This document shows, one piece after another, positions 32,266-56,500 of a stretch of DNA of 64,000 nucleotides. Source of the stretch: Macrostomum lignano (taxonomy: Eukaryota); the NCBI GenBank assembly GCA_002269645.1, contig NIVC01001242.1, positions 62,001-126,000 of the forward strand. Direction: 5' to 3'. The translations under genes were made by a program, and so were the position numbers. Below the pieces are notes generated by a model. It was given only the letters and a program-made list of their open reading frames with translations. It was not told the DNA's origin and searched no databases. Position 1 is the first letter of the stretch. Every line of letters starts with the position of its first letter.

Positions 32266-35200
32266 TTAAAATTTTTCAAGTTTTGCGAAACTGTTCACAT
32301 CAATCTTGGTAGGCAATGCAGCGTTGGTTTGTTGCTGCTGTCCCAGCGGCTGCGGCTGTTGGGCTGGTACTGAGCTGTCATTCTCAATGGTGTCATATAC
32401 AGTCTCCGACTCTTCACTTGTACCAGGTGACTGTGGAATTAAGAGAATTGCAAATAAAGCCTTCTAATAAACTTGATAAATACACTTATTCTGTAGAATA
32501 AACGTGCATTAAACTAATTAAATAAATACATAATAGTAAGTTCGTAACTTAAATACTTACAGTAGTCTGTAGTGGTTTTTTGTTTCGAATTGGCAAAGCC
32601 GGCGGTTGTTGTTGCTGCTTTTTCTTCGACCCCGGCTTTGGCGGCTTTGCTGGCGCCTTTTTCTGAGAATTGCGTAATAGAAAGTCGGTACGCAATCAGC
32701 TTAGGCCATATTCAAATACACAAAATACTTGAAGACACAAACTGAGACACTCACACGGACACAGACTGGGACACACACTCAGACACAAACTGGGACACCC
32801 ACTCAGACACAAACTGAGACACTCACACAGACAAAAACAAACTGAGACACTCACACAGACACAAACTGAGACACTCACACAGACACAAACTGAGACACAC
32901 TCACACAGACACAAACTGAGACACACTCACACGGACAGAAACTGAGACACTCACACAGACACAAACTGAGACACTCACACAGACACAAACTGAGACACTC
33001 ACACAGACACAAACTGAGACACTCACACAGACACAAACTGATCAGACACTCACACAGACACAAACTGAGACACTCACACAGACACAACTGAGACACTCAC
33101 AGTCGCAATCTCTAACACTCAGAATACAGTGTTCAGCTTACATTGGACTCAGCTCGTCTGAGATTCATTTGATCAATATTAGACGGCCCCGCACCGGATG
33201 CCAGACACGGTAACGAACCCGCGGCACCAGCTGTGTTCTCCAGAACTGCTTTGGTCTTCACTTCAGAGGTAGAATTCGTTTTTTCTAATTTTTCAGTTCT
33301 TCCATTTTCAGGCCCATGCAAAGGGACATCAGCCACCATATAAACTTCGTTTGTATCGTCAGGTTCTGCGTCCTCTTGAACGGCTTCAAGTGCGATGGAT
33401 CTCTGCTGCTTTAAAAAAAAGAATTTCTATTTTGCGATGGAATCTTCAAGCATAATTACTTAATAGCAGACACTTTCACTAACTAACCTGAACTGCAAAG
33501 GGTTCTATTTGTTCAGGTGTAGCCTGTTGGGTATTTGCATTTGGTGCTTCGTAGGTTTCATCGTGATCGGCCTGCATGATCACAAAGTTAAGATTGAGAC
33601 AGAGTTGAAAATGCATAAATACGATTGCAAGCGACCCCAGAAATAACGTTCATACATACCGAATTTCCAACATCAGCAGCAGCTACGTCCGGAGCGACGT
33701 AGATCGACTGGAAAAAGTTCAAATACGAATTTCGACCTTTATCACGTGATTTTAACAAAAAATTAATGGATTATTTCTTCTCAAACAAGAGAGTTACAGT
33801 CTAGACTTCTACTAATAGCTACTACAAAATGCTTTTTAAAACGAAGCGAATTCACTATGCTAAGTTATAACCCCGCCATACTATCAACCAACGAATGCTG
33901 ATTTCAAATAATTAAGCCAGCAACGATCCAATCGCTGAATTCAATTTTGTTTTGCATAAAAACAAAAAAACTCTCCTAGGTGAATATCGATACTTCAATA
34001 CTTTTTTGATAAAGAAATTAAAGAAAACTACATTTCTATTTGGGATTCAGAGGACATTTGTTGATTTGTTTAAATAATTCAAAAAATTATAGCTGTTTTA
34101 GGAGCTTATATATCTAACGACTTAAGAGGTTATAACCACAGAAACTAAATACCCATAAAATTAAAAGGTACTTAGTACCTGTGGTTACAACCCTACAAGG
34201 AAGCTTTTCAAGCTAAACTGTTTGGCCAATATATACCTGTTTTGGTTTGAGTACCTGGTCCGGCACAATGTTGAGTTAACTACATGCATGGCAGTTGGCA
34301 TCAATGTTATCAGGTACGAGTATGTTCCTAACATTAATAATCATACAAAGTAGGTCTGTCAGTTGTAAATACCTAACTACTTTGATAAATAAAAAATAAC
34401 CACAAGTAACAAAAAACTGCTTACAGACTCTCGAGTTTCCTCAGACGCATTGACATTCTGACTTGACCCCGTATACCGAGGGTTCTGAGTCATGTCCACA
34501 TAAGTGCACCGACTGTCAGTAGAGACTGCATTACCGTTGCGGTTGTCGGATGCGCCTGCGACGGACGAGCTTCCAGACGGCTTGGGCTCATGATGCACGT
34601 CTCCAGCCGCATTTTGACTGTGAGAAGCCTACATAAAAATGCGGTGAAAATACGATATCGAAAATTCTAAGCAATATAAAATAAAACGGCTTAAAATTGC
34701 AATAGGTTTGTGGAGCTTCAGCACCAGGGGCTTTAGCACCAGGGGCTTGGGCTTTAGCACCAGGGGCGCCAGCACCAGGGGCGCCAGCACCAGGGGCGCC
34801 AGCACCAGGGGCGCCAGCACCAGGGGCGCCAGCACCAGGGGCGCCAGCACCAGGGGCGCCAGCACCAGGGGCGCCAGCACCAGGGGCGCCAGCACCAGGG
34901 GCGCCAGCACCAGGGGCGCCAGCACCAGGGGCGCTAGCACCAGGGGCGCCAGCACCAGGGGCGCCAGCACCAGGGGCGCCAGCACCAGGGGCGCCAGCAC
35001 CAGTGGCTTTAGCACCAGGGGCGCCAGCACCAGGGGCGCCAGCACCAGGGGCGCCAGCACCAGGGGCGCCAGCACCAGGGGCGCCAGCACCAGGGGCTTT
35101 AAGCCTCAAATAAATATATCCGAGTATGGAATCAAACTAGGGATTGTGGGTGGCCGGCTTCACAGCTCATTCAAAACGGTGCTCACCTCATCAATGTAGT

Positions 35201-38200
35201 CAGCATCTCGTCGGCTAAAGCAACCAAGAGAAATCATTTTCTAAAATCAAGAAATTATAAATGATATTAATGGAATTCATATGAACACTTTCAGAACATA
35301 AAATATGATAGCTGGTCAGGATTTAGAATTTATACTCACGTGTTTATAAGCACCGAGCACTGCAAGAATAATGATGATGGCTAGCAGTGCACAGGCAGCA
35401 AATCCAGCCGCTGCTCCAATGCCAATTCCCATGTGTCTCTCTTTCAGTAGTTCTACAATCGATTATAAATGCATGTAAGTTGATTGGTTATTGATAGTTT
35501 AGGATTGCGTAGCCCTGAAGTGAGGCGCTTGAAAAACTAGCTAATTGTCTCAAAGGTGATTTAATAAATGAGCTGGTTACAAACTTTACTAATGTCTGTA
35601 TTTAGCTATATTGTTTTACCGATTTCTCAGGCAATATAAATAAAATGAGCAATTGCTCAAACTCAACGAAACTATCTATTCAGTAAGAATAGTAAGACTG
35701 GTTGCATCTTGGGCGAATGAGCTCTGTGATTGAGTATAGAGACTCGCAGCAGTATAGAATAAACTGTGGTCATAGACAATTTTTTTAAGCATTTGCTTGT
35801 ATTTTCTTGAGCAAAGCAAAGCAAATGAATTTTTAAACCATTTTATGTCTATGGTTTTATGCGAATGAACAACTGATCGGGTGGTTGAGAGTTCGCTCCA
35901 AGTTTGAGATAAATATTTATTGAAAAGATATTTGAGCGGTTGCTCAAACTGAGCTATTTCTTAGAATGTAAGCGATTAGAAGCGAGGTAGAGTTAGACTA
36001 AACTTTTGGTTAAGCCTGCTACAATTAGTTTTCCTCTGAGACAGGGACACCTAGACTAGAAAGGGTAAGGTCTTAACAAGAGAGGGAAGGGAGTGGTATA
36101 GGGAAACGATGGCTTGAGAACCGCCTTCTGGACCTGTCTATGGCCAAGAGGTGATGAACGGCGGCAACTCAAAATGACGAGCATTTATACTCAGCGTTTG
36201 AAAAAAAAACTTTGTCATATTTACTTTGAGCAACTGGCCCAACTCAGACCTCGTGAGTTATTTCTCAATATGAGTCTTGGCTGTTTACACAAAGACAATC
36301 TTTAGTCATTATATTCATTTAGCGACAAAACAATTAATAACTTATTGCGCAAGTACATTATGCTCATAGCCTAACATTTGTTTTAAAACAGTATTTTATG
36401 ACCATGTAAAAAGCAAGAACTTCATCATAAAAATACTCCTATCTTTTAGCATAGGCATTTCAGTGTTAGCCTGTTATAAAAAAGTATCGAGTAGCTTATA
36501 TTCTCATATGCTCACAGGGGTGTGTAGCGGCCCTGATTTTCTAATTATCAGGCATTCACTCTCTACCCCTTAGTGGCAGTGGTGGATTTAGGGGGGGGGG
36601 GGGGCGCCGCCCCCTTATGGCTTGCAATGATGGGCTCCCATTTCCTTTGAACTAAAATAGGTCCTCATTGCACCCAGTTTGCTCAGCATGGCGCCACTCT
36701 AGTGTACATTATGGCGCCACTCTAGTGTACATTATGGCGCAACTCTAGTGTATATTATGGCGCCACTCTAGTGTATATTATGGCGCCACTCTAGTGTATA
36801 ATATGGCGCAACTCTAGTGTATATTATGGCGCCACTCTAGTGTACATTATGGCGCCACTCTAGTGTATATTATGGCGCCTCTCTAGTGTATATTATGGCG
36901 CCACTCTATTATATATTATGGCGCCACTTTAGTGTACATTATGGCGCCCCTTTAGTGTACATTATGGCGAGACTCTAGTGTATATTATGGCGCCCCTCTA
37001 GTGTATACTATAGCGTCTCTCTAGTGAATATTATGGCGCCTCTCTACTGTATACTATGGTGCCCCTCTTGTGTATATTATAGCGCCACTCTAGTGTATAT
37101 TATGGCGCCCCTCTAGTGTAAATTATAGCGCCACTCTAGTGTATATTATGGCGCCCCTCTTGTGTATATTATAGCGCCACTCTAGTGTATAATTTGGCGC
37201 CCCCCACTCTTTTGGTTAAAATCCGCCTCCCCCAGTTTATATTTCTGAATCCGCCTCTGCTTGGTTTAGCAGCGGTACCCAGCACTCACCGCTGCCGTAG
37301 CCCTTGTCGCACACGTATCCAGCCGCCAGCGAGTACCGAAACTGGCCATTGAACGGAGCTGGCAGAGACGGAATGCCGTACAGACTTCGATTGCTTCGCT
37401 CGAGGCAGGCTGAATTCGCGGGGCACGGGTTGGGAATGCAGTCGGGATGATCGATGGAGCAGTTTCTGCCGGAGAAGCCTGCCAGGCATTGACAGGTGAA
37501 ATTTCTCAGGCCGTCAACGCAGGTGCCGTTGTTCACGCAGGGATTCGGCTGGCAGTCGTTAATCGGATTAGTGCAGTTGGGACCAGAGAAGTCCGTTTTG
37601 GAGCAGTTGCAGGTGTACCTATAGTTTAATTAGAAATAAATTACAGGAAAATTAGAGTTGCTCTTGTCAGTTTAACAATGTGAGAACAGTGATTGTTCAG
37701 TATGCAGTTTTGATGCATTATGAAATTTGAAAAATATGGAAAACGAGGAATTGAACAAACTGCCTTTCATTTTTTTGACCAAATAACCAGCTTATTTGTT
37801 CATTAGAGGCAGAGGCTGTGGGCCCCCTATCGCACTTTAAGCAACATTGTCACACAACCGGCAAGAGGCAATTACTGCCCATTCCGTCAACTCCCCTGAG
37901 CAGGAACACGCACACAGACGCACTCACACAGGGCCTTCGGAGTTGGCATTCAAGACCGTTAATTGCACGAGCAGAGCCAAGCCGAGATTCCAATTTAGCC
38001 CCGAATTAATTTGGCTGCACTTGGAATCAAGCCTGGGTCGCTGGCACATCAAAGCGCCGCGCTAGACCGCTACGCCCCCGTACGTACCAAATGACCTGGA
38101 ATTTGACTCACGTTGAGTTTCCATCAATGCATTCGCCTCCATTCTTGCACAGCCCAGTTTGGCAGTCATTGACATTTGTAGCACAAGAAGCGCCAGTCCA

Positions 38201-38937
38201 TCCTGCAAAGCAGCTGCAGTTTTTGCCGCTACTTGTTCCCACACAAAGTCCATTGCTGCACGGTTTCCGAATGGAGCAGGCCTCAAATAGTTCGCATCGA
38301 TTGCCTGGAAAGTTTTCAACATCAATGTGTGATCTTGTGTGTGTGTGTGTGTGTGCGTTGCTTAAAAAATTACTGCAACGGATGAAAATGAAGTTTTTAC
38401 CTGTGTAGTTGATGCTGCAGCTGCAATTAAAGAAAGGCTCTGTCTCTATGGGACTGCATAATCCGCCGTTAAAACAGACTGGCAACGAGTCGATACCCAT
38501 ATCCGGTTGCAGCTTGCTGCAGTAGTCATCTGTGACGCTGCAATTGTCTCCTGAGTAGGGCTTCGGGCAGGAGCAAACCGGCTCGCTGCTGTTGCAGATG
38601 CCACCGTTGACGCATTCCAAAGAATCGCAGGTTTCCCTGCGCTGTCGATTTAGCAAGGAAAAGTCATCGACTCCTGGGTATTTAATGAGGCGATTGCAGC
38701 TGCAAAAATGCTACTTACTACTTAAAAGATAAACAAACGAATTTTACTCAGTAAATAAAAAATGAGCTAAAATGAGTTTATTTCGATAAATGGATACCAT
38801 CTATGCATACCATCAGGATCAAGCTGCTGTATCGTATCCTTTGCCGATCCAGCAGCCGAAAGCAGGCAGAAGCAATAACTGAAGCCAATTACGATTGCTG
38901 ATAGATTTGACAGGTAGCTCTGGTGTCGTGAAGACAT
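32266..38937 (-). CDS. Gene C: about 652-aa EGF receptor-like protein (SP, RQRR site, ~6 EGF, TM, ~300-aa Tyr-motif tail)
   Basis: Exons 38811-38937, 38401-38673, 38112-38304, 37290-37618, 35340-35452 ([30 protein letters not shown]), then phase-0 exons 35187-35240, 34425-34628, 33660-33707, 33488-33571, 33142-33408, 32561-32662, 32266-32430; all GT-AG and in frame. Confidence 0.72.
32735..33100. repeat. 24-bp minisatellite (ACAGACACAAACTGAGACACTCAC)
   Basis: Tandem units in a gene C tail intron. Confidence 0.9.
34720..35100. repeat. 15-bp minisatellite (GCACCAGGGGCGCCA)
   Basis: About 25 near-perfect units in a gene C intron. Confidence 0.92.
36577..37259. mobile_element. hAT-like MITE carrying a 23-bp minisatellite (TGGCGCCACTCTAGTGTATATTA)
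   Basis: TIR CAGTGGTGGATTTA / (rc) CAGAGGCGGATTCA; flanks cttagtgg / cttggttt (5/8 match); array at 36690-37200. Confidence 0.55.
37805..38078 (-). mobile_element. tRNA-derived SINE
   Basis: Minus-strand 5' end GGGGCGTAGCGGTCTAGCG (A box) and GGCTTGATTCC (B-box-like), no cloverleaf 3' arm; extent approximate. Confidence 0.55.
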
Positions 38938-40117: not shown

Positions 40118-42190
40118 CTTACTTAGCTGCAGGGGGCTCCGTGCGTCCGGAAACAGCGAGGAGGCGTTGCCGCCCATTTCGCTAACCCCTGGCGACCACG
40201 GGCAGCTGGTGCTGTGGTGCCGCGCAGGGAGTTCCGGTAGTGCCGGTGTTATGGTTTAGGATCTCCGGGGGTCCGGTCAGTTTAGGGTGTCCGGGGCGGA
40301 GACCCTAAACGGTTTAGGATCTCCGCCCGGAGACCCTAAACCGTTTAGGATCTCCCCTGGAGACTTCTAACGGTTATGGGTCTCCGGGGTAGGAGATCTG
40401 AAACCGTTTAAGGGTCTCCGGGGCATTTTCAGGTCTCCGCACCCGGAGATCTTAAACCAGTTTCTGATCTCCCCATAGGAGACTCTAAACCAGTTTCAGC
40501 TCTCCGTCAGGGCCGCAAAAACAAAGTCTTGGTTTAGGATCTCCGGTTTCCGATCTCCCCCCATTTGTGTAAAACCAATGGTCATGGTATTGAACGCGTA
40601 CATGTATAAGAAGTGGAAAGGCATTTTTATCATCAACGTAGCATTAGTTTTATATGTATATGCTCGCACAACTGTGTATTTAAATGGAAAACTGTTTACT
40701 GTTAAAGTAATGAAGTAAATGTCCGCTTAGTGAAAAACCGGTGATGCACTTTCAGCCCGGTGCTTGGAGGAAGCATCTCTTGAGGTGTTTCCTATTGACA
40801 CACATGGTTAGTCCTCCTAGCCTGTACACGTTTTGACCAAGACACCTGGTCACGATGTAGACTTGCTGACTCCAAGTGTATCGCATCTTACCACCCTTCC
40901 GATCGTCCCTGCGAAGATTGCGAAGCCTAACTCTGTCCCCTCGCTTCAGATCCTGAACCCCAGCTGCTCCCACGGTGTGACCAGCTCGCACCTGTCACAA
41001 GACTCGACCACTGCCATGGCAATCGGTGTGACGGGAATGTCAGCATAGTATCGTGCAGTAAAAAGGCTCACTGTGCTGTTGACACCCACGTGACTTCCTT
41101 TCGAGTGAAGGCTGCGGATCTTATCCCGTACCTCTTCCTCTGTGAAAAGTACTCTGCGATGGTCTTCAGGCCGCATTCGCTGACTGTCGTCCTTATTAGT
41201 CACCCTGTAGTAAAGCGCTCCGTCATGGATGGAGAAACGCTTGCTCTTTTCTCTAATACGTCTTTTTAAGTTGGCCTTATCTTTGGCGTCCAATCTGGCT
41301 GGTACCTGCGTATATTCATTGTTTAGGACGTAGAAAAATATTTGATTGAGCGAAGCCATCAAGCTTTGAAATGCAGAAATCGACGAAAATCACACAGCAC
41401 AAACCTTTCTTATCATCTGCCCAATATAAATTTTTACAGCGCTTCCCGCCACCCATAAAATATGAGTACAAAGCTGATCTCCAAAATGTGCAAAGCCTAT
41501 TGAAAGTTACGCAAGAGTGCTCACACTTTGGGGTGCCAATCTCGATGTACATAGAAGTAGCTATAATTTTCATATAGAAAAGAACCGCGGAGATCCTAAC
41601 ACGGCGGAGACCTGTAACTCTATCTTATGTTATGGTTTCCGATCTCCGTGTGGGCGATCTTAAAATGACACAATTTTCAGTTTGTGATCTCCGGGCCGGA
41701 GACCCTAAAACGCGGAGATCATAAACTCTAACACCGGTGTCCCCAGCGCGGTCCCCCCGGAGAGCCCAGTGGATTGTCGCTCGCCCGGTAGCCCTTAGGT
41801 AGCGGTCGAGCTGGCAGAGATTCTCGGGCCTGAAAACGTCGGAGAGGTCCTGGTTTGGGCCAAGGTAGGTGAGCCTGTCCTGAGTAAAGGCGGGGCATTC
41901 ACAGATGAAGTGCTCCGCATTTTCGACACCGGAGAGGCAGAATGGGCATTCCTCACTGCGGATTTTCCCCTGGAGGTGACGATGCCTGGCAAAACAGCCA
42001 TGACCCGAGAGGGCCTGGTTACCGCCCTGATGTCCCTGCGGTTGAGTCCAAGCAGGGCCCTGCGCAGGGCGGAGGAAGGACAGGGGACAGCCGCGCGAGA
42101 TTGCCGGCAGTCGGGGGCGTTAGCCCACCTCTCCCTGTGCTTAGAAGCCACCCACTGGTTGATCCGAGTGGTATTGCCTAGGTGTAAGTA
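40118..42190 (-). mobile_element. 5'-truncated LINE of a related family (CCHC knuckle plus 3' UTR), split by a DNA transposon
   Basis: 41738-42190 encodes ...[20 protein letters not shown]...CPFC...AEHFICEC; 40118-40242 continues to the CTGCAGCTAAGTAAG tail. Confidence 0.8.
40247..41733 (-). mobile_element. Internally deleted Ginger1-like DNA transposon
   Basis: Termini TGT...ACA; 21-bp TIR TGTTATGGTTTAGGATCTCCG / TGTTAGAGTTTATGATCTCCG; CCGG TSD at 40243-40246 and 41734-41737. ORF from 41359 has an integrase-like N-terminus (KRFSIHDGALYY; LHSKGSHVG...RYY...CDRC) and a C-terminal GDRV..N.RR..RKGGK...W segment; no DDE core. Confidence 0.8.
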
Positions 42191-42346
42191 AGTAACTCCG
42201 ATGCTCAAAATTCACAGGGTTTAGCGGAGCAGCAGAAATTTTTTCACAATCTGCACCTAAGATCACCTAGGCAGACAGTTCAGGTTAAGTAGAAAGTGTT
42301 TAGTATAAGCATTATTTTTTACTTAATGTTGATGTACACTTGGTAC

Positions 42347-43059
42347 CAGGGGTGTCGCCACTGAGAGGAGCTAAAATGAAGGACCTGTGGCAGTAAAATG
42401 AGTGTATGCAACGCTCAAAAAAGAGTGTCTGCGGTGCCAAGATGAGTGTCTGCGGTGCCAAGATGAGTGTCTGCGGTGCCAAGATGAGTGTCTGCGGTGC
42501 CAAGATGAGTGTCTGTGGTACCAAGATGAGTGTCTGCGGTGCCAAGATGAGTGTCTGCGGTGCCAAGATGAGTGTCTGCGGTACCAAGATGAGTGTCTGC
42601 GGTACCAAGATGAGTGTCTGCGGTACCAAGATGAGTGTCTGCAGTACCAAGATGAGTGTCTGCGGTGCCAAGATGAGTATCTGCGGTGCCAAGATGAGTG
42701 TCTGCGGTGCCAAGATGAGTGTCTGCGGTGCCAAGATGAGTGTCTGCGGTGCCAAGATGAGTATCTGCGGTGCCAAGATGAGTGTCTGCAGTGCCAAGAT
42801 GAGTGTCTGCGGTACCAAGATGAGTGTCTGCGGTACCAAGATGAGTGTCTGCGGTACCAAGATGAGTGTCTGCGGTACCAAGATGAGTGTCTGCGGTACC
42901 AAGATGAGTGTCTGCGGCGCTAAAATGAGTGCCTACGACGCCGAGAAATCAGTACTAGCAAAATACCAATTTCCTAAACAATTTAGGACTTATTTGTTCG
43001 GGAATTTCGCTTTGCCCCCCGCCCCTCGCCAAACCATAAAATCCGTGGCGACAGATCTG
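42347..43059. mobile_element. hAT-like MITE carrying a 21-bp minisatellite (GTCTGCGGTGCCAAGATGAGT)
   Basis: TIR CAGGGGTGTCGCCAC / (rc) CAGATCTGTCGCCAC; 8-bp flanks cttggtac / cttgatgc (6/8); array at 42420-42930. Confidence 0.62.
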
Positions 43060-44815: not shown

Positions 44816-47800
44816 TTAGAAACGAGCGATTTTACTTGAATCGACTCTGGCCGGTAAATCTATTTTTGCTGCTTGCGGTTGCTGCTGTCCACCAGAAGAA
44901 TCCGGCAAACTGGTCGGGTGATTATCGAGCTCATCATAGACATTTCCGGGGTCTTCCAGATTAGCGGCTGACTCTTCAGCGGTCTGAAAAAATACAATTA
45001 TTATATGTATGTACGATACCTGTGTAGAAATAATCTGATTATATAATAAACTCCCATACTGCTGGTTGTAAACCGGAAGTTGCGGGATCATCAAAAGCCC
45101 GAAGAAATTTTCTATATGGTCAGTGCGTTATCGGGCCCTGAATAATGACTGCATCAGCATCTGGCTCTGGGCTGGCAAAACTGCGCAACAAAAACTGTAA
45201 ACGTTGGCATAAGCGCGTAGCAAAAGTAGCAAATATTCAAAATTGTCAAAATTGTAAATCGGCACTTTGAACATCAGTCACGCGATTTGATGGCTTATTT
45301 GATGGCGGTGTGAACAATAGCTATGAGAATTTGTGACTTTGGATGTTATACTGCAGGGCTCGGCAAAATCCGGCCCGCGGGCCACACACATGTGGCCCCT
45401 TCTATCCTCTCCTATTCTCTTTCCTTTCTTCTCGCATTTCATCAATTCTCTTCTCTCTCCTCTCTCCTCTCACCTATCCTCTCTTCTCTCTTCTCGCCTA
45501 TCATCTATACTCTCCTCTCTACTCTCTCCTCTCTCCCCTCCTCTCCTCTTTCCGCTCTCCAGTCTCCCCTCTCCTCTCCTCTCTCCTCTCTCCTCTCTCC
45601 TCTCTCCTCTTTACTCTCTCTTATCTCCTCTCCTCTCTCTTATCCTCCTATCTGGCCCTAAGATAAAAATGTTTGTCGACTCCTGTTTTGCACGAACAAA
45701 TCCTGCTCTCATCTCAGTCGGACACTAGATACCACTGGTTTATAAAAGCAGTAGACATTACCCATGAACCTTTTGCACAAATTTTCACTTCGTATTATGA
45801 TAAAATGTAAATACAGGTAAAAATAAAAAATCGAGACGATTGAAAGCTACTAAAGTTACCATATTGACTTGTCCTTAACTTCATTTCTAACATAATTAAG
45901 ATCTTACCAACAGCTGATTCTGAGTTCTCATTGCGTGCCGCTCTGGAAGAGGGGCGGCACGCTTGACTGCTGCCGCTGCTGCTGCTTCTGCGGTTTCTGC
46001 AGGTGCCTCGGCTTCGGGTTCGGTTTTGGCTTTGAACCACCACTGGTTGGCGGCTTAGATGGGGGCTGATCCGGTGGCTGAGTTGCCTGACTCGATGACT
46101 GGTCAAGCGGATTGTCCGGACAGGCGTAGAATTCGTCCAACTCAACGGGCTGCAGAAGTGAGTTCAAGAAACGATTGTAATTAATCACTAATTTGTTAGA
46201 ATTTGTTCTATTTTGAAAATTAAATCAAAGCTAGATCTATTGGGCTGATATTTTGATTTCTTTTCAGCTGTTAAAACGAATTTTATTGTAAATGACGCAA
46301 GTTTCTCAATGGTATTATGGATTTTACTGACGATATAGATGGCAAAGCAAGACAAAAACAATTTCTATAAGCGCAAATATGAAATATTTATCGTCAATTT
46401 GATGTTTTTTAATCATTTTTCTAAAAGCGTAAAAAAAGTTTTTCTCGAGGGGGGGCTCTCAGCTCTACGGTACTAAAAGTAGTCTGATGCGAACTTGAAT
46501 TTTATGAAACTCAACTTCAAACTGTACTTCATAAAAATTGAATTTTATGAAGTACAAAATCACAATTTTTCATTGAAAAAATCTAATCATAATTCATTGT
46601 AAAGCGGAAATAAGAATATTTACCGACTACCACCCACTGTACGCCCCACTTAGTTGTCCCACAGGGTATGAGACGAAAAAAATTTGCTGAACGAGAAAAA
46701 ATCGACATCATTATTTTTCTACTTACGTTAGAAGCAGTTGTGTTTTCTGACAGCTGCTGCTCTGCAACTGGTTCCGGAGTCTGGTGTGCATCCGGTGCAA
46801 CGTAAACGTCATCAGCTGATTCACCACCATCGGCAACTAGGTCTGAATCCGGTGTCTGATTTGCATCCGGTGCGCAGTAGAAATCATCACCTGAGTTGCC
46901 GCAAAATCCGCTGCTTGGTTTTCTTCCTGCAGTTTTTTTTAAATTAATTGACCAAGTGTAGAGAAAAGCGGAGATTAAAATTCAAGCGTTGAGTATTGAT
47001 AGGTGAGTGATTCTTTTGATGAAGACACAGCTATAGTAGAACCATGGACTCTAAAACTATATATGATACGCTCATACTCCTAAAAATATATTTAAAAGAT
47101 TTGTTCAGCCCAAGAGTCGAATAGTTCATACGAGGTTCAGAAGCTTTAACAGTCAATCAAGTCTGATGTACATGAGAATATCAAACATTTATAACTGGAT
47201 GTTCATTAAACCCGCTTAGGATGGCTATAAACAGCTATTTCCCTAGAGCCTTAAAAACAAATGCAGAATTTACCTGATCTTCTCCAGTTGCATTCGGATC
47301 AGCTTCCTCAACCGTATTTTTGAGGCCAGAAGTGCCAGCCTGAGAGGCTGACTGACCGGCTGCAGCTGGGGTTGTCTTCAATAGCTTGCGTAGCTTGGAG
47401 CTGGTCTTGCTTATTAAGCTCATTTTAGCGCTCGATTTAGGATTTTCCTCTTTGGATCGCTTTTTTGATTTATTGTCTTCTTTGTCATCTGCTGCCGCTT
47501 GCTGCTCATGCTGCTCAGTAGATTGGTCTATGTCATTCGGAACAATGTACACTCCACCAGACAGATCATCGGATGCATGAGGTGTTTCTTGAACTTCATT
47601 TCGGACAGGTGTCTCCTGAACAGTAACACGCAGGTATCACTATAAAATCTCAAACTCCTTTCCCGAGGATAACACTTAAAAGTCTGTTTTTTATCTGCAT
47701 GAAACGCAACCAGCTTTACCTACTCGTAACTTGCAGACAATGTCCTAAGCCAATTATTTAAAGCAATAGGCATTGACATTGACTAACATTTCACTTTCTT

Positions 47801-49379
47801 TTCCAAAAAACTGTCACAGTGAGGTTTAAAGCAGCCTTTCTGAAAGACTATAGCGCAAGCAGTGTGTAACAGGTGTTCTAATCCTGCTGCTGTAAGGGCA
47901 TGAGTGAGTTTTCAGTCTTTGTTCAGTAAATAATAGTTCACTTTTTTGTTCGCGAATTAATATCTTCCGCTGTCATGCAGGCCAGACTCACTTACCTCGG
48001 GCTAAACACACCAATTACCGAATCGTGCAAACTCGAAGATTTAAACCAGATCATGCGAAACTGGGGGACCTCCCTGGACGGCGCCAACACTCTATCCTTC
48101 CGGAATGGGCGCCCGGGCTTTTCCGCTGTGTCCCACTTGGAGCTGTCCTGCAGCTAAGTCAAGATAAGTTCCTAGTTTATAGAATCCAAATATACATAAG
48201 TTGGTAGTTAAACTTGATTTGTTTAAAATTGTTCAATGTAAAAATTCATCCGTAGCTACTTTTTTTTCTTTGTTTCAGAAGCGATACACACATGGGCACT
48301 ATATGACACATTGGAGTTGGACACACCTAATGAGACGCACTTGTAGGGTAGAGTCAACTACAATAATTTGATATTTGATCCCGATAAAAGCTGGCACAAA
48401 AACCTCCAAGCATCTTCGAGACTAAAAAATAAAAGAAAGCTAAAAAATAACTTACATGAACCGATTCGATGTGCTCTTCAACCACGGTAACGGAGCTCGC
48501 GTTAGTGCCGCTCATGTCACCCAATTCTTCATCGCCGGTATTAATTCCTGCGTTTAAATACGCAGTCGCGTCAATATAATGCTGTCCATCATTCAGAGCC
48601 GACTCGGTACTATCTGGCCTTTTGTTTCGTTCGACAACGTCAGGCTGCCGACATATCAGTTTGCCCTAAAAGTGTTAATTTCGGTTTGCCATATTTTAGT
48701 AAGATTTTTATTAAAGGGACTGCCATATTTTGTAAACAAATAATATATACAATGGTACCTTTCTAAGCAGCACGACGAATAGAACGACAAGTGCGATTAA
48801 GATAATCCAGCCCAGTAATCCGACAATTCCAACTGCGATAGCTACGTCTTTTAAATTTTGTCCGCCTGGAACTTTAAATTTTTTCAACTTTGTTAGAAAA
48901 AATAATAAGAAAAATAGTTATTATTTAACCACGTAGCAAAGCATTTCTACTGAACAATACTTTGCGTAATTAATCATTGACCTATGTAAGCTAGAGTTAA
49001 AAAAGCAATTACGAGAATTGATACCCATCACAGGCAACACTTCAGTGTGGTCATCAGTGATGTTGCACGCGTCCCCAGAGTAAGGCCATGGGCAGGAACA
49101 GAACGAGTCGTTACCAGTGTCGTTGCAGACTTCACCATTGATGCACTCGAAACTGCCGCAGGGCGTTGTACTCGGTTCCGAATCTAAATAGATAATAAAG
49201 GCATAAACTTCGGCTAGTCAATGTCTCCAATTCGAAGCTTACGACCTAAAATTTACACAGATTAAATCTAGATAGACTAGCATTTACTAACCAGCAAGTT
49301 GCCCAACAACAGAAGCCGCTGTTATGATCAACAACAGACAAAGAAACTCTTGATTGTTCGCTGGTAGAAGTTGCCTCAT
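44816..49379 (-). CDS. Gene D: 1-EGF single-pass protein with a long Tyr-motif tail (about 505 aa if two 1-bp deletions are corrected)
   Basis: Exons 49292-49379 (SP), 49025-49183 (EGF CGSFECINGEVC...CPWPYSGDAC), 48759-48865 (TM VAIAVGIVGLLGWIILIALVVLFVVLL-RK), 48456-48665, 47274-47615, 46727-46926 and 45908-46149 (each 1 nt short of phase 0-0), 44816-44983. The last exon is homologous to the last exon of gene C. Confidence 0.62.
45352..45660 (+). mobile_element. hAT/Charlie-like MITE end followed by a CT-rich tract
   Basis: CAGGGCTCGGCAAAATCCGGCCCGCGGGCCACA terminus; related relic at 26277-26410 with a GA-rich tract. Confidence 0.45.
47980..48168 (+). mobile_element. About 190-bp 5'-truncated copy of the 11032-16934 LINE family
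   Basis: gccagactcacttacctcggg...cctgcagctaagtcaag aligns with 16650-16925. Confidence 0.8.
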
Positions 49380-51309: not shown

Positions 51310-51570
51310 TATCCATGTGCCCTTCCTAAACCCCATGTGCCCTCCCCATACCCCATTTCCCTTCCCATACCCTATGCCCTCCATATACTCATGTGCCCTC
51401 CCCATACCCAATGTGAATTCCCCACACACCATATGCCCTCCCCATACTCCATGTGCCCTCCCATACCCAATGTGAATTCCCCACACCCCATATGCCCTCC
51501 CCATACCCCATGTGCCTTCCCCATACCTTATTTGTCCTCCTCATATCTCTGTGCCTTCCACATACCCATG
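51310..51570. repeat. ~20-bp degenerate minisatellite (CCCCATGTGCCCTCCCCATA)
   Basis: Direct reading. Confidence 0.75.
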
Positions 51571-53599: not shown

Positions 53600-56500
53600 T
53601 CACGCGAGCTGGATTGAACTGAACTTGGCTGAATTGTTACTCAAATTATCGTAGGTGTGGTCATCGGTCGACGTTTCATATACACCAGCATAAGGCGATT
53701 CTGTTGCTTCGGTCGGCTGACCTCCAACACTGAGCTGCTGCAATGCAATTAGAATTCATATCCAAGTGATATTTTTAGCAATGCAGCAGAACCGCCTTAT
53801 CGTTCAAAGGGAAATATCTTACATGCATCCGAATGCGGTCATAATCAGCAAAGGTGTAAGGAGTTTCGTCCTCTGTGTCAGGTTCCGGCGTGCATTTACC
53901 CTAGGAATTAACGAATCATAGAATACAAATTTAATAATAAACAGAACAGTACTAAACGATCATAACATTTATCATAACAAAGCACTACTAAGAAAAAGAA
54001 GCTTACCTGAACAAAATCTTCTTGTGGCGGAGATGGAGCACTGCTTGTGAAGGAACCTTTACCCTGCAACTGACTCCTCTAAAATTTTAACAAAAAAACT
54101 CAGGATTGTTACTCAAACTATGTAGCTCGTAGACCTACACCCGTAATTCATACCAATCAATAAACATACATGCCACTACAACTTACCGATCGATATCGAA
54201 CAATGAAAATAACAATGCCACACGTAAAAGCCGAAGACAGTGTTACACTGACCACAACCAAGATTGAATAGAAACCAATTGAGCCGACAAAACCAGTTGA
54301 ACATTCTGATGAAGCTAAAATACGATGTGCGGGCTTAAGATAAAATGAATCGTCTTAAAAACTGTACGCAGGATAAACTTAGTGCGAAACCTACCATGCG
54401 ATTTCAAACACAGATACCCATCAGCTGTTTTGTACTTGAATGACCCGTTAAATGGCCACGGAAGAGTTTCATGGTTATAATTTGCTGAGTGGCTTCTCTC
54501 TAAACACACTTCGTCGCTACCGCACGGATTCGGGCTGCATTCTGAGTTGTCAACTGAGCAGTCCGTTCCAGAATAGCCGGGGTGGCACACGCAACTGAAA
54601 AAAAGTCTGATTGCATTCAAACCTAAGTATTATTTAATAATGCCATAATTAGCAAAAAATACTCACGAAGCCTTTGACGACGTGCACGTTCCTCCGTTTC
54701 TGCATGGCAAATATACCTCACAAATATCAAGCGACGAGCTCAAGACGACACCTGAAGACTCACTGGCTGCCACTGCTCCTGACAGAGCAAGGTAAAATGG
54801 GGAAGAACTCAAAATCAGTGGCCTAGCCTCATTCAATCTCGGATGGGAAATTATTCCCCGAAATCCAGTCACGCCTGAAGGCATCGCAGCCCAGATGCTG
54901 GCTGGAAAAACAGGCAGAGATCGCTTTGATCTGCCGCCGGTGCTTGGCGGTGATGCGCCACTGAAGCCGCCGATGATGAGCTGGCCTGACAGCTGCGGCA
55001 GCGGACTCGCACTGCTCAGCGATGCCGACCTGACTGAAGATGACACTGACAGCGACAGCGAGCGACCCGATATAGACACGGAGATCTTCACGGAGACGAA
55101 GCTGCCGGTGGCCACCGAGTCTGAGGACGTCAGCGCTGCGATGTGGGAGCCGTTGCCGTGCAGTAACTGGGCGGACAGACGGCCAGAGTGATCGATCTGA
55201 AAAGATTGAAACAAATACTGACTTTGCAGTGAGCTGCAAGTGTACTTGTATGCGCCAGTCGCTAGAGCGGGGTGGGGGTTGCTATTGTACAGCATGTACG
55301 TGCTCTTCACCCACCCCTGTCTCTATCTTTTATACCCAGTTATGTAACAATCGTTGTATCGTATTTAACCTGCGTATCGATCTAATAAACGCCAAGAGGC
55401 TTCGTCAACTCTCAGTTGTATCTCTCTGCCTTAGTCTACAACTGGTAGCAGAGCAAATTATTCTAGAATGGCTGAGAAAGGTTTGACCGCCAGTGCAGTG
55501 CTGCCCAGAGTTTTCAGTACCGGCAACTTTAAGGAATGGCTGCAGCGTTTCAATGTATGCGCAAAAGTCAACAAGTGGGACACGTGCAAAGCGGAGCGAC
55601 TGGCCACATTTTTGGATGGCGAGGCTCTCGTCGTTTATTTGGAACTGTCGGCAGGAGATCAGGCAGACTACGACAAAGTAGTCCAGGCATTGGATGATGC
55701 ATTCCACCCGAACGGCGAGCACTTCGCCGTCATGGAGGCGTTCAAATCAAGGAAGATTTTGTCAAATGAGACTCCACGCATGTATCTTTACGAGTTAAAG
55801 AAGATGCTCAAAAGCTCCTCCGTGGACAACAAAGATGCTCAAGAGGCTCTGCTGTTCCATCAGTTCGTCTGTGGCCTTCCCGAATCCGTGAGCTGGCAGA
55901 TTCGCGCGGACTCCAGCGTTAAGACCTCAGAGCAAGCTCTTCAAAAGGCCCAGCTAATGATGCAGCACAGCTCGCCAAGTATCCCAGCAGCAGCGGTGCA
56001 ACCTCAGTCGAGCCAATCCAGCGAAGTTCAGGAGCTGCGGGACACTGTGCAGAGTCTGCAGGCATCGGTGAGCACCCTGAGTTCCCAGCTGCAGCAGCTG
56101 GCAGCCTGTGGAGTGAGGACGAGCAGCACAACGAGACCTCAGCACCGTTCGAAGTCTGACATCATCTGCTACAACTGCCACAAGGCCGGCCACATTGCCA
56201 GAGATTGCTACAGCAGGCGACAGCCGGGAAACGCCAGAGGCTGGGGTGTGCGGGCCCGCAACCCCGGCCAGCAGTAACTGCGGGCCCAGCAGCAGCGGCT
56301 TCAAGGCCGGCGCTCACAGTCGGCGGGATCTTCGACGGATGCAGCGTCGCGCCCGACCGACTATCGCAGTGTGAGTGCAAGCTTGATGGCAGAAGTGTGA
56401 AGGCGCTGTTAGACACCGGAAGCCAGTGCTCACTAGTTGAGTCCAGCATCCTGACAAAATCCCAGCTCAGACAGGCAACTGCAGCCAGAGTGCAACTTCA

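What the first reader, a model, noticed from the sequence alone, without database searches (positions are those of the whole stretch)
32266..54078. Cytoplasmic tails made of phase-0 exons that mostly carry one tyrosine docking motif (ITIM/ITSM-like, YxxP, YxxM)
Seen in C: DYIDE, TYVDM, IYVAP, TYEAP, VYMVA, a PxxP/poly-Q exon, TVYDTI. Seen in D: HYIDA/AYLNA, VYIVP, FYCAP plus VYVAP, FYACP, PPLPER, VYDEL. Seen in E: PYTFA/DYDRI, SPYAGV/VYET/TYDNL. Known: TxYxxI is the ITSM consensus, SxYxxV the ITIM consensus, YxxP binds Crk/Nck-type SH2, YxxM binds PI3K p85, YxN binds Grb2; canonical Crumbs tails have none of this. Inference: Crumbs-type ectodomains were grafted onto phosphotyrosine signalling scaffolds. 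The symmetric phase-0 exons would let splicing or exon duplication tune the number of docking sites.
Basis: partly seen in the sequence, partly recalled or inferred. Interest (0 to 1): 0.72.

Follow-up and report, generated by a model that had tools for sequence, protein, structure and literature searches.

The report
Flatworm EGF receptors, modular tyrosine tails
Three neighbouring genes of the flatworm Macrostomum lignano encode EGF-repeat membrane proteins whose disordered cytoplasmic tails are built from in-frame (phase-0) exons carrying conserved tyrosine and proline motifs; these are probably docking sites for SH2/SH3 signalling adaptors, which makes this a lineage-specific example of a known receptor design and not a rebuilt Crumbs.

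Summary
The window is Macrostomum lignano (assembly Mlig_3_7, contig NIVC01001242.1). Genes C, D and E lie on the minus strand.

Confirmed:
- 18 of the 19 quoted motifs are present.
- All 15 tail introns are phase 0 and every tail exon is a multiple of 3.
- RNA-seq-derived GenBank models reproduce the exon chains exactly: C in the window, D and E in sister copies.

Tyrosines are the best-conserved tail residues:
- Four Y-Y coincidences appear in a Tyr-masked C/D alignment (P<1e-5).
- None of 39 substitutions among three genome copies falls within Y-1..Y+3 (P=0.014).
- YxxP, YDx[IL] and PxLPx[RK] exceed chance. ITIM/ITSM, YxN and YxxM do not.

Corrections:
- Only 8 of 15 exons carry exactly one Tyr.
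- PPLPER is not in the window. The window copy of D has two 1-nt homopolymer deletions.
- The window copy of E has a rearranged N-terminus and a retrotransposon insertion.
- C has only EGFs, D has one EGF, and no tail is Crumbs-like.

Verdict: a lineage-specific EGF(/LamG) receptor cluster sharing a transmembrane-plus-tail cassette that probably serves as a phosphotyrosine/SH3 docking scaffold. Phosphorylation, partners and exon skipping are untested. It is a new member of a known kind, of moderate interest.

The parts
37290..38937 (-). Gene C ectodomain, exons 1-4 (38937-38811, 38673-38401, 38304-38112, 37618-37290): signal peptide plus EGF repeats, no laminin-G. Intron phases 1,1,2,1.
   Evidence: Exact spliced mapping of GenBank PAA70386.1 (P0005). 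Pfam EGF/hEGF hits.
35340..35452 (-). Gene C transmembrane exon (113 nt), entered in phase 1 and left in phase 0 (..[30 protein letters not shown]).
35187..35240 (-). C1 tail exon, 54 nt, phase 0-0: [18 protein letters not shown] (juxtamembrane Cys, YIDE).
34425..34628 (-). C2 tail exon, 204 nt, phase 0-0. Carries TYVDM and NPRY (an NPxY motif). An alternative 3' splice site at 34617 gives a frameshifted truncated tail in the GenBank model of a sister copy (P0011).
33660..33707 (-). C3 tail exon, 48 nt, phase 0-0: [16 protein letters not shown] (YxxP unit 1).
33488..33571 (-). C4 tail exon, 84 nt, phase 0-0: [28 protein letters not shown] (YxxP unit 2).
33142..33405 (-). C5 tail exon, 264 nt, phase 0-0. 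Carries EVYMVADVP, which aligns with D4 FYACPDNP. The NAGNAG acceptor at 33408/33405 is used differently in two GenBank models.
32561..32662 (-). C6 tail exon, 102 nt, phase 0-0, no Tyr. Lys/Pro/Gln-rich, with PAKPPK and PALPIR (PxLPxR).
32266..32430 (-). C7, last exon plus stop codon: ..[12 protein letters not shown].. ending LEKF*. Carries the conserved YDx[IL]xN motif.
49025..49379 (-). Gene D exons 1-2 (49379-49292 signal peptide; 49183-49025 single EGF-like domain). Both introns are phase 1. These exons come from my manual model.
   Evidence: The EGF exon sequence is present in P0003, P0004 and P0006.
48759..48865 (-). Gene D transmembrane exon (107 nt), phase 1 to 0 (..AIAVGIVGLLGWIILIALVVLFVVLLRK).
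   Evidence: The TM segment is included in GenBank P0017 of a sister copy.
48456..48665 (-). D1 tail exon, 210 nt, phase 0-0: GKLICRQ..HYIDATAYLNA.. (two Tyr).
47274..47615 (-). D2 tail exon, 342 nt, phase 0-0: ..GGVYIVPND.. followed by a Lys/Ser-rich stretch.
46727..46926 (-). D3 tail exon. It is 201 nt in the sister copies and 200 nt here, because one G is missing between 46903 and 46902, which shifts the frame. It carries an internal 75-nt tandem duplication: GDDFYCAPDANQTPDSD / ADDVYVAPDAHQTPEPV.
45908..46149 (-). D4 tail exon. It is 243 nt in the sister copies and 242 nt here, because one C of a C5 run is missing between 45955 and 45954. It carries FYACPDNP, a Pro/Lys/Gln-rich region and PPLPER (PxLPxR), the last readable only in the sister copies.
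44816..44983 (-). D5, last exon plus stop codon: ..DPGNVYDELDNH.. ending IARF*. Homologous to C7.
54187..54314 (-). Gene E transmembrane exon (128 nt), phase 1 to 0 (..GSIGFYSILVVVSVTLSSAFTCGIVIFIVRYRS).
   Evidence: The sister-copy model P0016 was mapped.
54007..54078 (-). E1 tail exon, 72 nt, phase 0-0, no Tyr: RSQLQGKGSFTSSAPSPPQEDFVQ.
53823..53900 (-). E2 tail exon, 78 nt, phase 0-0: GKCTPEPDTEDETPYTFADYDRIRMH.
53600..53737 (-). E3, last exon plus stop codon: ..ESPYAGVYETSTDDHTYDNLSNN.. ending IQLA*. Contains the ITAM-like YAGV-x9-YDNL and a YDx[IL]xN motif.
54318..60666 (-). Gene E ectodomain in the window: EGF, laminin-G, laminin-G, EGF. It is interrupted by an LTR-retrotransposon fragment at 55226-59551 (+ strand) sitting in what is a 73-nt intron in the sister copy. 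The N-terminus is rearranged, with a frame change upstream of 60503.

Best explanation
Genes C, D and E belong to a tandem, Macrostomum-specific cluster of type-I membrane proteins. Their ectodomains are EGF repeats, with laminin-G domains in E.

C and D clearly share one 'transmembrane + tail' cassette, and E probably shares it too. The cassette is a transmembrane (TM) exon that runs from phase 1 to phase 0, followed by 3 to 7 symmetric phase-0 exons. These exons encode an intrinsically disordered tail of 99 to 389 residues.

The tail is a string of short linear motifs:
- a juxtamembrane Cys;
- an acidic YID[EA] motif;
- two or three copies of a ~25-residue unit, [DE][DE]x[VFT]-Y-x-[AC]-P-[DN] (YxxP);
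- a Lys/Pro/Gln-rich segment with a PxLPxR SH3-type site;
- a terminal YDx[IL]xN motif;
- in C, also YVDM and NPRY.

Proposed mechanism (inferred, not shown). Ectodomain engagement or clustering lets an acidophilic cytoplasmic tyrosine kinase of the Src/Abl type phosphorylate these tyrosines. The pYxxP sites then recruit Crk/Nck/Abl-class SH2 domains. PxLPxR binds an SH3 domain. YDx[IL] acts as a further SH2 site, or as an AP-2 sorting site.

Because all tail exons are in frame with each other, duplicating, losing or skipping a unit changes the number of sites without breaking the reading frame. The different exon/intron layouts of C and D show that such changes have happened in evolution.
For: Shown.
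- Origin and transcript-based models. The window is M. lignano Mlig_3_7. Its GenBank models come from a genome-guided RNA-seq assembly (PMC5730564).
- PAA70386.1 maps exactly onto the 12 predicted exons of C, with 7 of 7 tail introns in phase 0.
- P0017 (D) and P0016 (E), from sister copies, carry exactly the predicted tails.
- All tail exons are multiples of 3 with AG/GT borders in three genome copies.
- Coding constraint between copies. In the compared C and D tail exons (the window's own broken D3 and D4 were left out of these comparisons), total length changes between copies are in-frame, while the introns accumulate 21-38 gap openings. Tail dN/dS is 0.45 against 0.13 for the ectodomain.
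- Tyr conservation. With Tyr masked during alignment, C and D (34% identical) still put 4 Tyr on 4 Tyr. The comparably rare residues F, H, M, C and I give no coincidence and R gives one. P<1e-5.
- None of 39 variable residues among the three copies lies within Y-1..Y+3, P=0.014.
- The Tyr context has the features I take, from my own knowledge, to be typical of tyrosine-kinase substrates: hydrophobic at -1, acidic upstream, basic residues depleted.
- YxxP, YDx[IL] and PxLPx[RK] exceed shuffles.
- The repeat unit is duplicated inside D3, with 37 of 51 nt identical at 75-nt spacing. The matching units in C are split by introns.
- There is no Pfam domain in the tails.

From the literature and from my own knowledge.
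- Crk SH2 recognition of pYxxP predates animals, and transmembrane proteins with cytosolic YxxP repeats exist in choanoflagellates (PMC5043372).
- The Abl optimal substrate I/V-Y-A-A-P (own knowledge) resembles [IV]-Y-V-A-P.
Against: - There is no direct evidence of tyrosine phosphorylation or of any binding partner.
- The tail has no detectable homolog outside M. lignano among 1.84 billion representative proteins. Cross-species conservation therefore could not be tested.
- The C/D comparison amounts to one ancient duplication, so the motif statistics are not independent.
- Tail dN/dS of 0.45 shows only weak overall constraint.
- Tyr content (about 2% in C and D) is not elevated.
- Partner assignments from 4-residue motifs are weak.
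- In the window itself, D is frame-broken twice and E is rearranged. The window copies may therefore be non-functional or mis-assembled.
Confidence: 0.55

Rival explanations
1. The conserved tyrosines are mainly trafficking signals and not phosphotyrosine docking sites. YDx[IL], YDRI, YAGV and YVDM fit the YxxPhi motif read by AP-2 and other adaptor mu subunits. NPRY fits the NPxY endocytic/PTB signal. The acidic-x-Y-D-x-I/L sequence also fits an LC3-interacting-region pattern. On this reading the tails control endocytosis, sorting or turnover of the receptors.
For: - Six of 20 tyrosines have L/I/V/M/F at +3.
- YDx[IL] is the most over-represented motif (4 matches, P<5e-5), and it is the one motif shared by C, D and E.
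- NPRY is present in C2.
- The motif definitions come from general knowledge of AP-2 and PTB signals.
Against: - The largest conserved class, Y-x-[AC]-P-[DN], has Pro at +3 and cannot be a YxxPhi signal.
- L/I/V/M/F at +3 is only marginally enriched overall (P=0.057).
- The acidic upstream context and the basic-residue depletion fit kinase substrates.
- The two readings are not exclusive: many YxxPhi sites are also SH2 sites.
Confidence: 0.2
2. The tails are fast-evolving, low-complexity disordered sequence without specific signalling function. Tyr conservation reflects generic 'sticker' or hydrophobic roles, or shared ancestry. The cluster, at least in this window, is partly decaying: D is frameshifted, E is rearranged and carries a transposon insertion, and B is a fragment.
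For: - Tail dN/dS is 0.45, and nonsynonymous:synonymous codon changes are 21:14, 16:8 and 30:9 between copies.
- No homolog was found outside the species.
- The window copy of D has two frame-breaking 1-nt deletions.
- The window copy of E is disrupted.
- No paper in the searched library mentions these genes by locus name.
Against: - Tyr is the only rare residue conserved between C and D.
- Motif cores are free of substitutions among copies.
- Frame and splice sites are preserved in all copies.
- Transcripts exist.
- The D deletions sit in homopolymer runs within otherwise 100% identical sequence. This fits PacBio consensus error in a triplicated region better than it fits decay (the assembly method is).
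Confidence: 0.15
3. One reading: Crumbs ectodomains were fused to ITIM/ITSM-type inhibitory tails that recruit SHP phosphatases, with p85 and Grb2 sites alongside.
For: - TVYDTI fits TxYxx[IV] and SPYAGV fits SxYxxV.
- YVDM fits pYxxM. YLNA and YDNL fit pYxN.
- E and A have an EGF + laminin-G layout.
Against: - ITIM/ITSM, YxN and YxxM counts are at chance level (P=0.15, 0.28, 0.19).
- The defining -2 residue is not conserved across paralogs (T, N, H).
- C and D lack laminin-G domains.
- No tail carries the Crumbs FERM-binding or ERLI features.
- PDB matches are only generic Notch EGF and neurexin laminin-G domains.
Confidence: 0.07

Closest known systems
PECAM-1 (CD31) cytoplasmic domain
   Same: The tail is encoded by a series of short exons (exons 9-16), with tyrosines spread over individual exons (9 and 12-15). 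Alternative splicing of those exons changes signalling and adhesion behaviour (PMC2132561). This is the same 'one small exon, about one Tyr motif' design, and here all exons are also frame-compatible.
   Different: PECAM-1 has an Ig-superfamily ectodomain and true ITIMs with proven SHP-2 binding. Here the ectodomains are EGF/laminin-G, the dominant motifs are YxxP and YDx[IL], and alternative splicing is only hinted at. There is no sequence homology.
CED-1 / Draper / MEGF10 / PEAR1 multi-EGF receptors (own knowledge)
   Same: These are single-pass receptors with EGF-repeat ectodomains and disordered tails carrying NPxY plus YxxL/I or ITAM-type tyrosine motifs, and proline-rich stretches in PEAR1. 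C has NPRY plus YDTI. E3 has the ITAM-like YAGV-x9-YDNL.
   Different: - No EMI domain and no MEGF-type EGF hits. The EGFs here are Notch/hEGF-type.
- NPxY occurs once (P=0.09) and is lost in D.
- There is no strict ITAM.
- No sequence homology of the tails to anything outside M. lignano.
p130Cas (BCAR1) substrate domain, and choanoflagellate transmembrane proteins with YxxP repeats
   Same: Repeated YxxP motifs in a disordered region act as multi-site Crk SH2 docking platforms. Pre-metazoan transmembrane proteins with several cytosolic YxxP repeats have been described (PMC5043372). C and D carry 2 and 4 YxxP motifs within a repeated acidic unit.
   Different: There are only 2-4 YxxP motifs, against 15 in p130Cas. 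The core is Y-[VCEI]-[AVC]-P, not YDxP. There is no SH3 or FAT-like domain. Binding has not been tested.
Crumbs (CRB1-3 / Drosophila Crb)
   Same: E and neighbour A combine EGF repeats with laminin-G domains in a single-pass protein.
   Different: - Crumbs has a short tail of about 37 residues with a FERM-binding motif and a C-terminal ERLI. Here the tails are 99-389 residues and end LEKF, IARF or IQLA.
- C has no laminin-G domain and D has only one EGF.
- Orthology was not shown.
Nephrin YDxV-Nck sites (own knowledge)
   Same: The terminal YD[TEN][IL] resembles the pYDxV class bound by Nck SH2 domains on an adhesion-receptor tail.
   Different: Nephrin has an Ig/FnIII ectodomain, and +3 is V in nephrin. 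Nothing was tested here.

Membership tests
Crumbs | Ectodomain of many EGF repeats interspersed with laminin-G domains | tested here: inconclusive
   Met for E (two laminin-G regions plus EGFs). Not met for C (EGF only) or for D (one EGF).
Crumbs | Short cytoplasmic tail (about 37 aa) with a FERM-binding motif and a C-terminal ERLI PDZ-binding motif | tested here: not met
   The tails are 308, 389 and 99 aa and end LEKF, IARF and IQLA. Neighbour A's tail also ends QEVFF.
Crumbs | Sequence orthology to Crumbs proteins | not tested
   Only generic hits were obtained: Notch EGFs and neurexin laminin-G in the PDB, and M. lignano paralogs in the protein searches. No phylogeny was made.
ITIM/ITSM inhibitory receptors | [SIVL]xYxx[ILV] or TxYxx[VI] motifs, conserved | tested here: not met
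   Two of 20 tyrosines match, against a shuffle mean of 0.69 (P=0.15). The -2 residue differs at the homologous site of C, D and E (T, N, H).
ITIM/ITSM inhibitory receptors | Phosphorylation-dependent recruitment of SHP-1, SHP-2 or SHIP | not testable with these tools
   Needs biochemistry.
Multi-YxxP docking scaffolds (Crk/Abl/Nck SH2 ligands) | Several YxxP motifs in a disordered region, above chance and conserved | tested here: met
   Six YxxP against 1.69 expected (P=0.004). Three aligned YxxP-unit tyrosines are conserved between C and D in a Tyr-masked alignment. There are no substitutions in motif cores among the three copies. No Pfam domain in the tails.
Multi-YxxP docking scaffolds (Crk/Abl/Nck SH2 ligands) | Tyrosine phosphorylation and SH2 binding | not testable with these tools
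   Needs phosphoproteomics or pull-downs.
PECAM-1-type modular-exon tails | Tail encoded by several short, mutually frame-compatible exons | tested here: met
   All 15 tail introns are phase 0, and the exons are 48-342 nt, all multiples of 3.
PECAM-1-type modular-exon tails | Documented alternative splicing of the tail exons | tested here: inconclusive
   Hints only. UniRef model P0007 joins C3 to C6. P0004 joins the TM exon to C2. GenBank P0011 uses an alternative 3' splice site in C2, and P0010 and P0005 differ at a NAGNAG acceptor. No read-level data were available.
CED-1/Draper/MEGF10/PEAR1 | EMI domain and MEGF-type EGF array | tested here: not met
   Pfam finds EGF, hEGF, EGF_2 and weak teneurin-type EGF, and no EMI domain.
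CED-1/Draper/MEGF10/PEAR1 | NPxY plus YxxL/I or ITAM in the tail | tested here: inconclusive
   NPRY occurs once, in C2 (P=0.09). There is no strict ITAM. The ITAM-like YAGV-x9-YDNL occurs in E3 (P=0.04). YDx[IL] is present in all three tails.

The most novel reading that the evidence does not exclude
A flatworm-specific receptor system in which one portable 'TM exon (phase 1 to 0) + string of symmetric single-motif exons' cassette has been shuffled onto different EGF/laminin-G ectodomains within a tandem cluster. Regulated exon skipping, alternative 3' splice sites, or both would then set how many SH2/SH3 docking sites each isoform displays. That would be a splice-coded signalling output for adhesion-type receptors in a regenerating animal.
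Probability: 0.15. Interest if true: 0.55.

Novelty: new member of a known kind. Interest (0 to 1): 0.35.

Why it matters
If the tails are real phosphotyrosine/SH3 scaffolds, this cluster gives Macrostomum lignano a set of uncharacterised, lineage-specific surface receptors wired to conserved adaptor machinery of the Crk/Nck/Abl type. M. lignano is a transgenic, regeneration-competent flatworm model. The cluster is also a compact natural example of how signalling tails are assembled and resized by duplicating or losing in-frame exons. The genes are annotated only as 'hypothetical protein', and no paper in the searched library mentions them by locus name. The design itself is already familiar: short-motif tails, one exon per motif, EGF receptors with tyrosine tails. 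The value is therefore as a new instance and a tractable model, not as a new principle.

Tried and rejected
- Cross-species conservation. An exhaustive HMMER search with the C tail against 1.84 billion representative proteins found only another M. lignano model and one spurious repeat protein. I replaced it with comparisons between paralogs and between genome copies.
- Expression and function data. Full-text searches for Mlig004956, Mlig018087, Mlig022268, Mlig017317 and Mlig027982 returned nothing. They were also absent from the supplements of PMC5816591.
- Tail-exon paralogs elsewhere in the window. tblastn of all 15 tail exons found only C7/D5 and the YxAPD units. No copy of the E tail or of the C/D tail is attached to gene A.
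- C5 homologous to D2. This was first suggested by a weak tblastn hit (E=0.88). I rejected it in favour of C3/C4/C5 matching D3a/D3b/D4, from the global and the Tyr-masked alignments.
- A short intron to repair the D4 frame or the E N-terminal frame. Rejected, because the candidate introns would be only 16-18 nt.
- My first dN/dS run mis-placed a 1-codon indel and gave nonsense for the tail. It was redone correctly. One search was an empty run.
- Pfam and PDB searches of the tails found no domain.
- I did not run structure prediction. A single-sequence model of a disordered tail would not be informative.

Full report
**What the window is.**
The minus strand of 26-61 kb carries a tandem cluster of EGF/laminin-G membrane-protein genes, seen in the open frames and TM scan. 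Protein searches hit only Macrostomum lignano. One hit, GenBank PAA70386.1 (BOX15_Mlig004956g1, 651 aa, P0005), is 100% identical to the window. It lies on contig NIVC01001242.1 of assembly GCA_002269645.1, Mlig_3_7. That assembly is PacBio/Canu polished with Pilon, and it is known to be redundant because the sequenced DV1 line carries extra large chromosomes. Its GenBank gene models come from a genome-guided RNA-seq transcriptome (StringTie/TACO/TBONE, ORFs by TransDecoder) (PMC5730564). Two further genome copies of the locus exist, 93-98% identical at the DNA level: L002/L004 on NIVC01000114.1 and L003 on NIVC01001300.1.

**Checking the observation.**
- All quoted peptides except PPLPER occur on the minus strand, within the stated range.
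- Manual reading of splice sites gave exon chains that were then confirmed independently.
- P0005 maps exactly onto 12 window exons. The four ectodomain introns have phases 1,1,2,1. The TM exon (35452-35340) is entered in phase 1 and left in phase 0. All following exons (54, 204, 48, 84, 264, 102 and 162 nt) are phase 0-0.
- GenBank P0017 (D, sister copy) and P0016 (E, sister copy) contain exactly the predicted D1-D5 and E1-E3 chains.
- In all three copies, every C and D tail exon is a multiple of three with AG|...|GT borders.
- So 15 of 15 tail introns are phase 0, against 1 of 7 ectodomain introns in C and E. These introns are not independent, because C and D are paralogs.
- 'One tyrosine per exon' holds for 8 of 15 exons: C 1,2,1,1,1,0,1; D 2,1,2,1,1; E 0,2,3.

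**State of the window copies.**
D3 and D4 in the window are 100% identical to the sister copies except for single-base deletions in short homopolymer runs. D3 reads GATTTT-GCGG, with the gap between 46903 and 46902. D4 has C4 instead of C5, with the gap between 45955 and 45954. These break the frame. They explain why the GenBank D model in this contig has 388 residues against 521 in the sister copy. They also explain why PPLPER cannot be read in the window.

Given the assembly method, consensus error is more likely than decay, but I could not check reads.

The window's E differs structurally from its sister. A 4.3-kb LTR-retrotransposon fragment (gag zinc knuckle, RNase H, integrase; + strand) sits at 59551-55226, inside what is a 73-nt intron in the sister copy. 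Upstream of 60503 the sequence jumps to the first EGF of an A-like gene, with a change of frame. The E tail itself is intact and nearly identical to the sister copy.

**Are the tyrosines special?**
- Tyr content is ordinary: 7 of 308 in C, 7 of 389 in D, 6 of 99 in E. Context and conservation are not ordinary.
- Against composition-preserving shuffles, the 20 tyrosines show V/I/F/L/T at -1 (12; P=1e-4), at least 2 acidic residues upstream (9; P=0.003), Pro at +3 (6; P=0.004), and depletion of K/R within +-5 (P=0.005).
- By motif: YxxP 6 (P=0.004), YDx[IL] 4 (P<5e-5) and PxLPx[RK] 2 (P=3e-4) exceed chance.
- ITIM/ITSM (2; P=0.15), YxN (2; P=0.28), YxxM (1; P=0.19) and NPxY (1; P=0.09) do not exceed chance. 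An ITAM-like YAGV-x9-YDNL in E3 is marginal (P=0.04).
- C and D tails are 34% identical. When Tyr is masked to X before aligning, 4 tyrosines still coincide (IYVAP/FYCAP, TYEAP/VYVAP, VYMVA/FYACP, VYDTI/VYDEL). F, H, M, C and I give none and R gives one. Random placement gives P<1e-5.
- Among the three genome copies, 39 of 694 tail residues vary and none lies in the 70 positions Y-1..Y+3 (hypergeometric P=0.014).
- Overall the tail is weakly constrained: dN/dS is 0.45, against 0.13 for the ectodomain+TM of the same gene pair. In the compared exons (the window's broken D3 and D4 were not among them), total length changes between copies are in-frame, while the introns collect 21-38 gap openings.
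- This pattern, a loose disordered matrix with fixed short motifs, is what short-linear-motif scaffolds look like.

**Anatomy of the cassette.**
- C and D share a juxtamembrane K-[ML]-I-x-x-x-C, then YID[EA].
- Next come three copies of an acidic ~25-residue unit, [DE][DE]x[VFT]-Y-x-[AC]-P-[DN]-A-[NH]-x-Q-x-T-P-[DE].
- Then comes a Lys/Pro/Gln-rich stretch with PxLPxR: PALPIR in C and PPLPER in D.
- The last exon carries YDx[IL]xN and ends in Phe.
- The three Y units are C3, C4 and C5 in C, separated by introns. In D, two units lie in one exon as a 75-nt tandem duplication (37 of 51 nt identical) and the third opens D4. D also has an extra long exon, D2. So unit number and intron positions have changed while the frame was kept.
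- E shares the exon logic, a GKC juxtamembrane start and YDNLSNN (compare YDTIEND and YDELDNH). Its homology to C and D is therefore probable but not proven.
- The small neighbour B ends GQLPCCCKSRRPNSELEYF, which resembles C1 (..[13 protein letters not shown]).
- The large neighbour A is the most Crumbs-like in its ectodomain. It has an unrelated, Tyr-free 66-residue tail joined through a phase-1 intron and ending QEVFF.
- C looks like the N-terminal EGF module of an A-type gene placed on the cassette. E looks like the laminin-G module placed on it. D keeps one EGF. Ectodomain/tail recombination within the cluster is therefore real, but it is not 'Crumbs plus a new tail'.

**Mechanism.**
Shown: these are transcribed, spliced single-pass proteins with disordered tails made of frame-compatible exons that carry conserved Tyr and Pro motifs.

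Inferred: the acidic, hydrophobic-at-minus-1 context is what I take, from my own knowledge, to be typical of Src/Abl-type kinase substrates. [IV]-Y-V-A-P resembles the Abl optimal substrate I/V-Y-A-A-P (also own knowledge). Recognition of pYxxP by Crk-family SH2 domains predates animals, and transmembrane proteins with cytosolic YxxP repeats occur in choanoflagellates (PMC5043372). PxLPxR is a class-II SH3 ligand pattern. YDx[IL] could be an SH2 site (Nck-type pYDxV class) and/or an AP-2 YxxPhi sorting signal.

I therefore favour a clustering-activated phosphotyrosine/SH3 docking scaffold (confidence about 0.55). A trafficking-signal reading for the terminal motif is the main, non-exclusive rival. 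'No specific function, partly decaying cluster' is the sceptical rival.

**Comparison with known systems.**
- The exon logic is that of PECAM-1. [quoted passage not shown]
- The protein logic resembles CED-1/Draper/MEGF10/PEAR1 (EGF receptors with NPxY/YxxL/ITAM tails; own knowledge) and p130Cas-type YxxP platforms.
- Membership in any of these families fails on defining features: no Ig domain, no EMI, no SH3/FAT domains, and no homology outside the species.
- Crumbs membership fails on the tail, and for C and D on the ectodomain too.
- ITIM/ITSM membership fails on chance-level counts and on the non-conserved -2 residue.

**Alternative splicing.**
There are only hints.
- GenBank models of two copies differ by a NAGNAG acceptor at C5 (QQRS versus QQQRS).
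- The model of the third copy uses a 3' splice site 11 nt inside C2, which truncates the tail after DYIDE.
- Older UniRef models join C3 directly to C6, or the TM exon to C2. The same set of models also fuses neighbouring genes.
- Junction-read counts are needed.

**Verdict.**
The structural observation is sound and well above chance. The general 'docking scaffold' reading is the best explanation but is untested. The Crumbs and ITIM/ITSM labels should be dropped. This is a new, lineage-specific member of a known kind of receptor design.

Noticed in passing
window 46903/46902 (D3) and 45955/45954 (D4), minus strand: The window copy of gene D has two single-base deletions in short homopolymer runs, within sequence otherwise 100% identical to two sister genome copies. 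They truncate the GenBank model to 388 aa (521 aa in the sister copy). Assembly error is likely, but a real frameshift is possible.
   Followed up: yes
window 55226-59551 (+ strand ORFs 55468-56277 and 57383-59179): An LTR-retrotransposon fragment (gag zinc knuckle, RNase H, integrase) is inserted antisense into an intron of gene E. That intron is only 73 nt in the sister copy.
   Followed up: partly
window ~60503-60666, minus strand: The N-terminus of the window's gene E is a deletion/fusion. The first EGF of an A-like gene (..TSSTPPCLC) abuts ..KPGWSGPQCNETT of the EGF before laminin-G 1, with a change of reading frame. The sister copy is not rearranged here.
   Followed up: partly
window ~26910 down to ~4306, minus strand; LINE ORF at 13095-16586 (+): Neighbour gene A is a large EGF/laminin-G gene (GenBank product 1473 aa). 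A non-LTR retrotransposon (endonuclease-RT-RNase H ORF of 1163 aa) sits in the GC-rich block at 8-17 kb that interrupts it. Its 66-residue tail (exon 4518-4306) has no tyrosine, is joined by a phase-1 intron, and ends QEVFF.
   Followed up: partly
window 30453-27567, minus strand: Neighbour gene B (GenBank product 186 aa) has one EGF, a TM segment at ~28470, and a 20-residue tail, GQLPCCCKSRRPNSELEYF, resembling exon C1. Some database models read through from C into B, which fits the polycistronic or trans-spliced transcription units described for this species.
   Followed up: partly
window 34632-35105, 42315-42948, 32700-33100, 24131-25275, 19100-20000, 61300-62090: Long minisatellite or tandem-repeat arrays lie in introns and intergenic DNA. 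They show up as repetitive peptides in all three frames (GAPGA.., ADTHLGT.., CLSLCLCE.., PSIISQN.. and others).
   Followed up: no
window 40949-42211, minus strand: An integrase-like fragment (weak H2C2 zinc-binding domain hit) and adjacent ORFs lie between genes D and C. Older UniRef models fuse D, this element and C into chimeric proteins.
   Followed up: partly
window 33408/33405 (C5 acceptor) and 34617 (inside C2): GenBank models of two copies use a NAGNAG acceptor differently. An alternative 3' splice site 11 nt into C2, used in the third copy's model, frameshifts and truncates the tail after DYIDE.
   Followed up: partly
L001 vs L002 vs L003, C and D tail regions: Divergence between the genome copies is mosaic. 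Some exon+intron blocks are 100% identical between two copies (C3-C5, D2-D5) while neighbouring blocks differ by 5-16% (C2, C6-C7 intron). This suggests gene conversion or a patchwork assembly of haplotypes.
   Followed up: partly
C-termini: 32269 (C), 44819 (D), 4306 (A), 27567 (B): Four of the five cluster proteins end in Phe (LEKF, IARF, EVFF, LEYF). This may be a shared C-terminal recognition motif, for example a non-class-I PDZ ligand.
   Followed up: no
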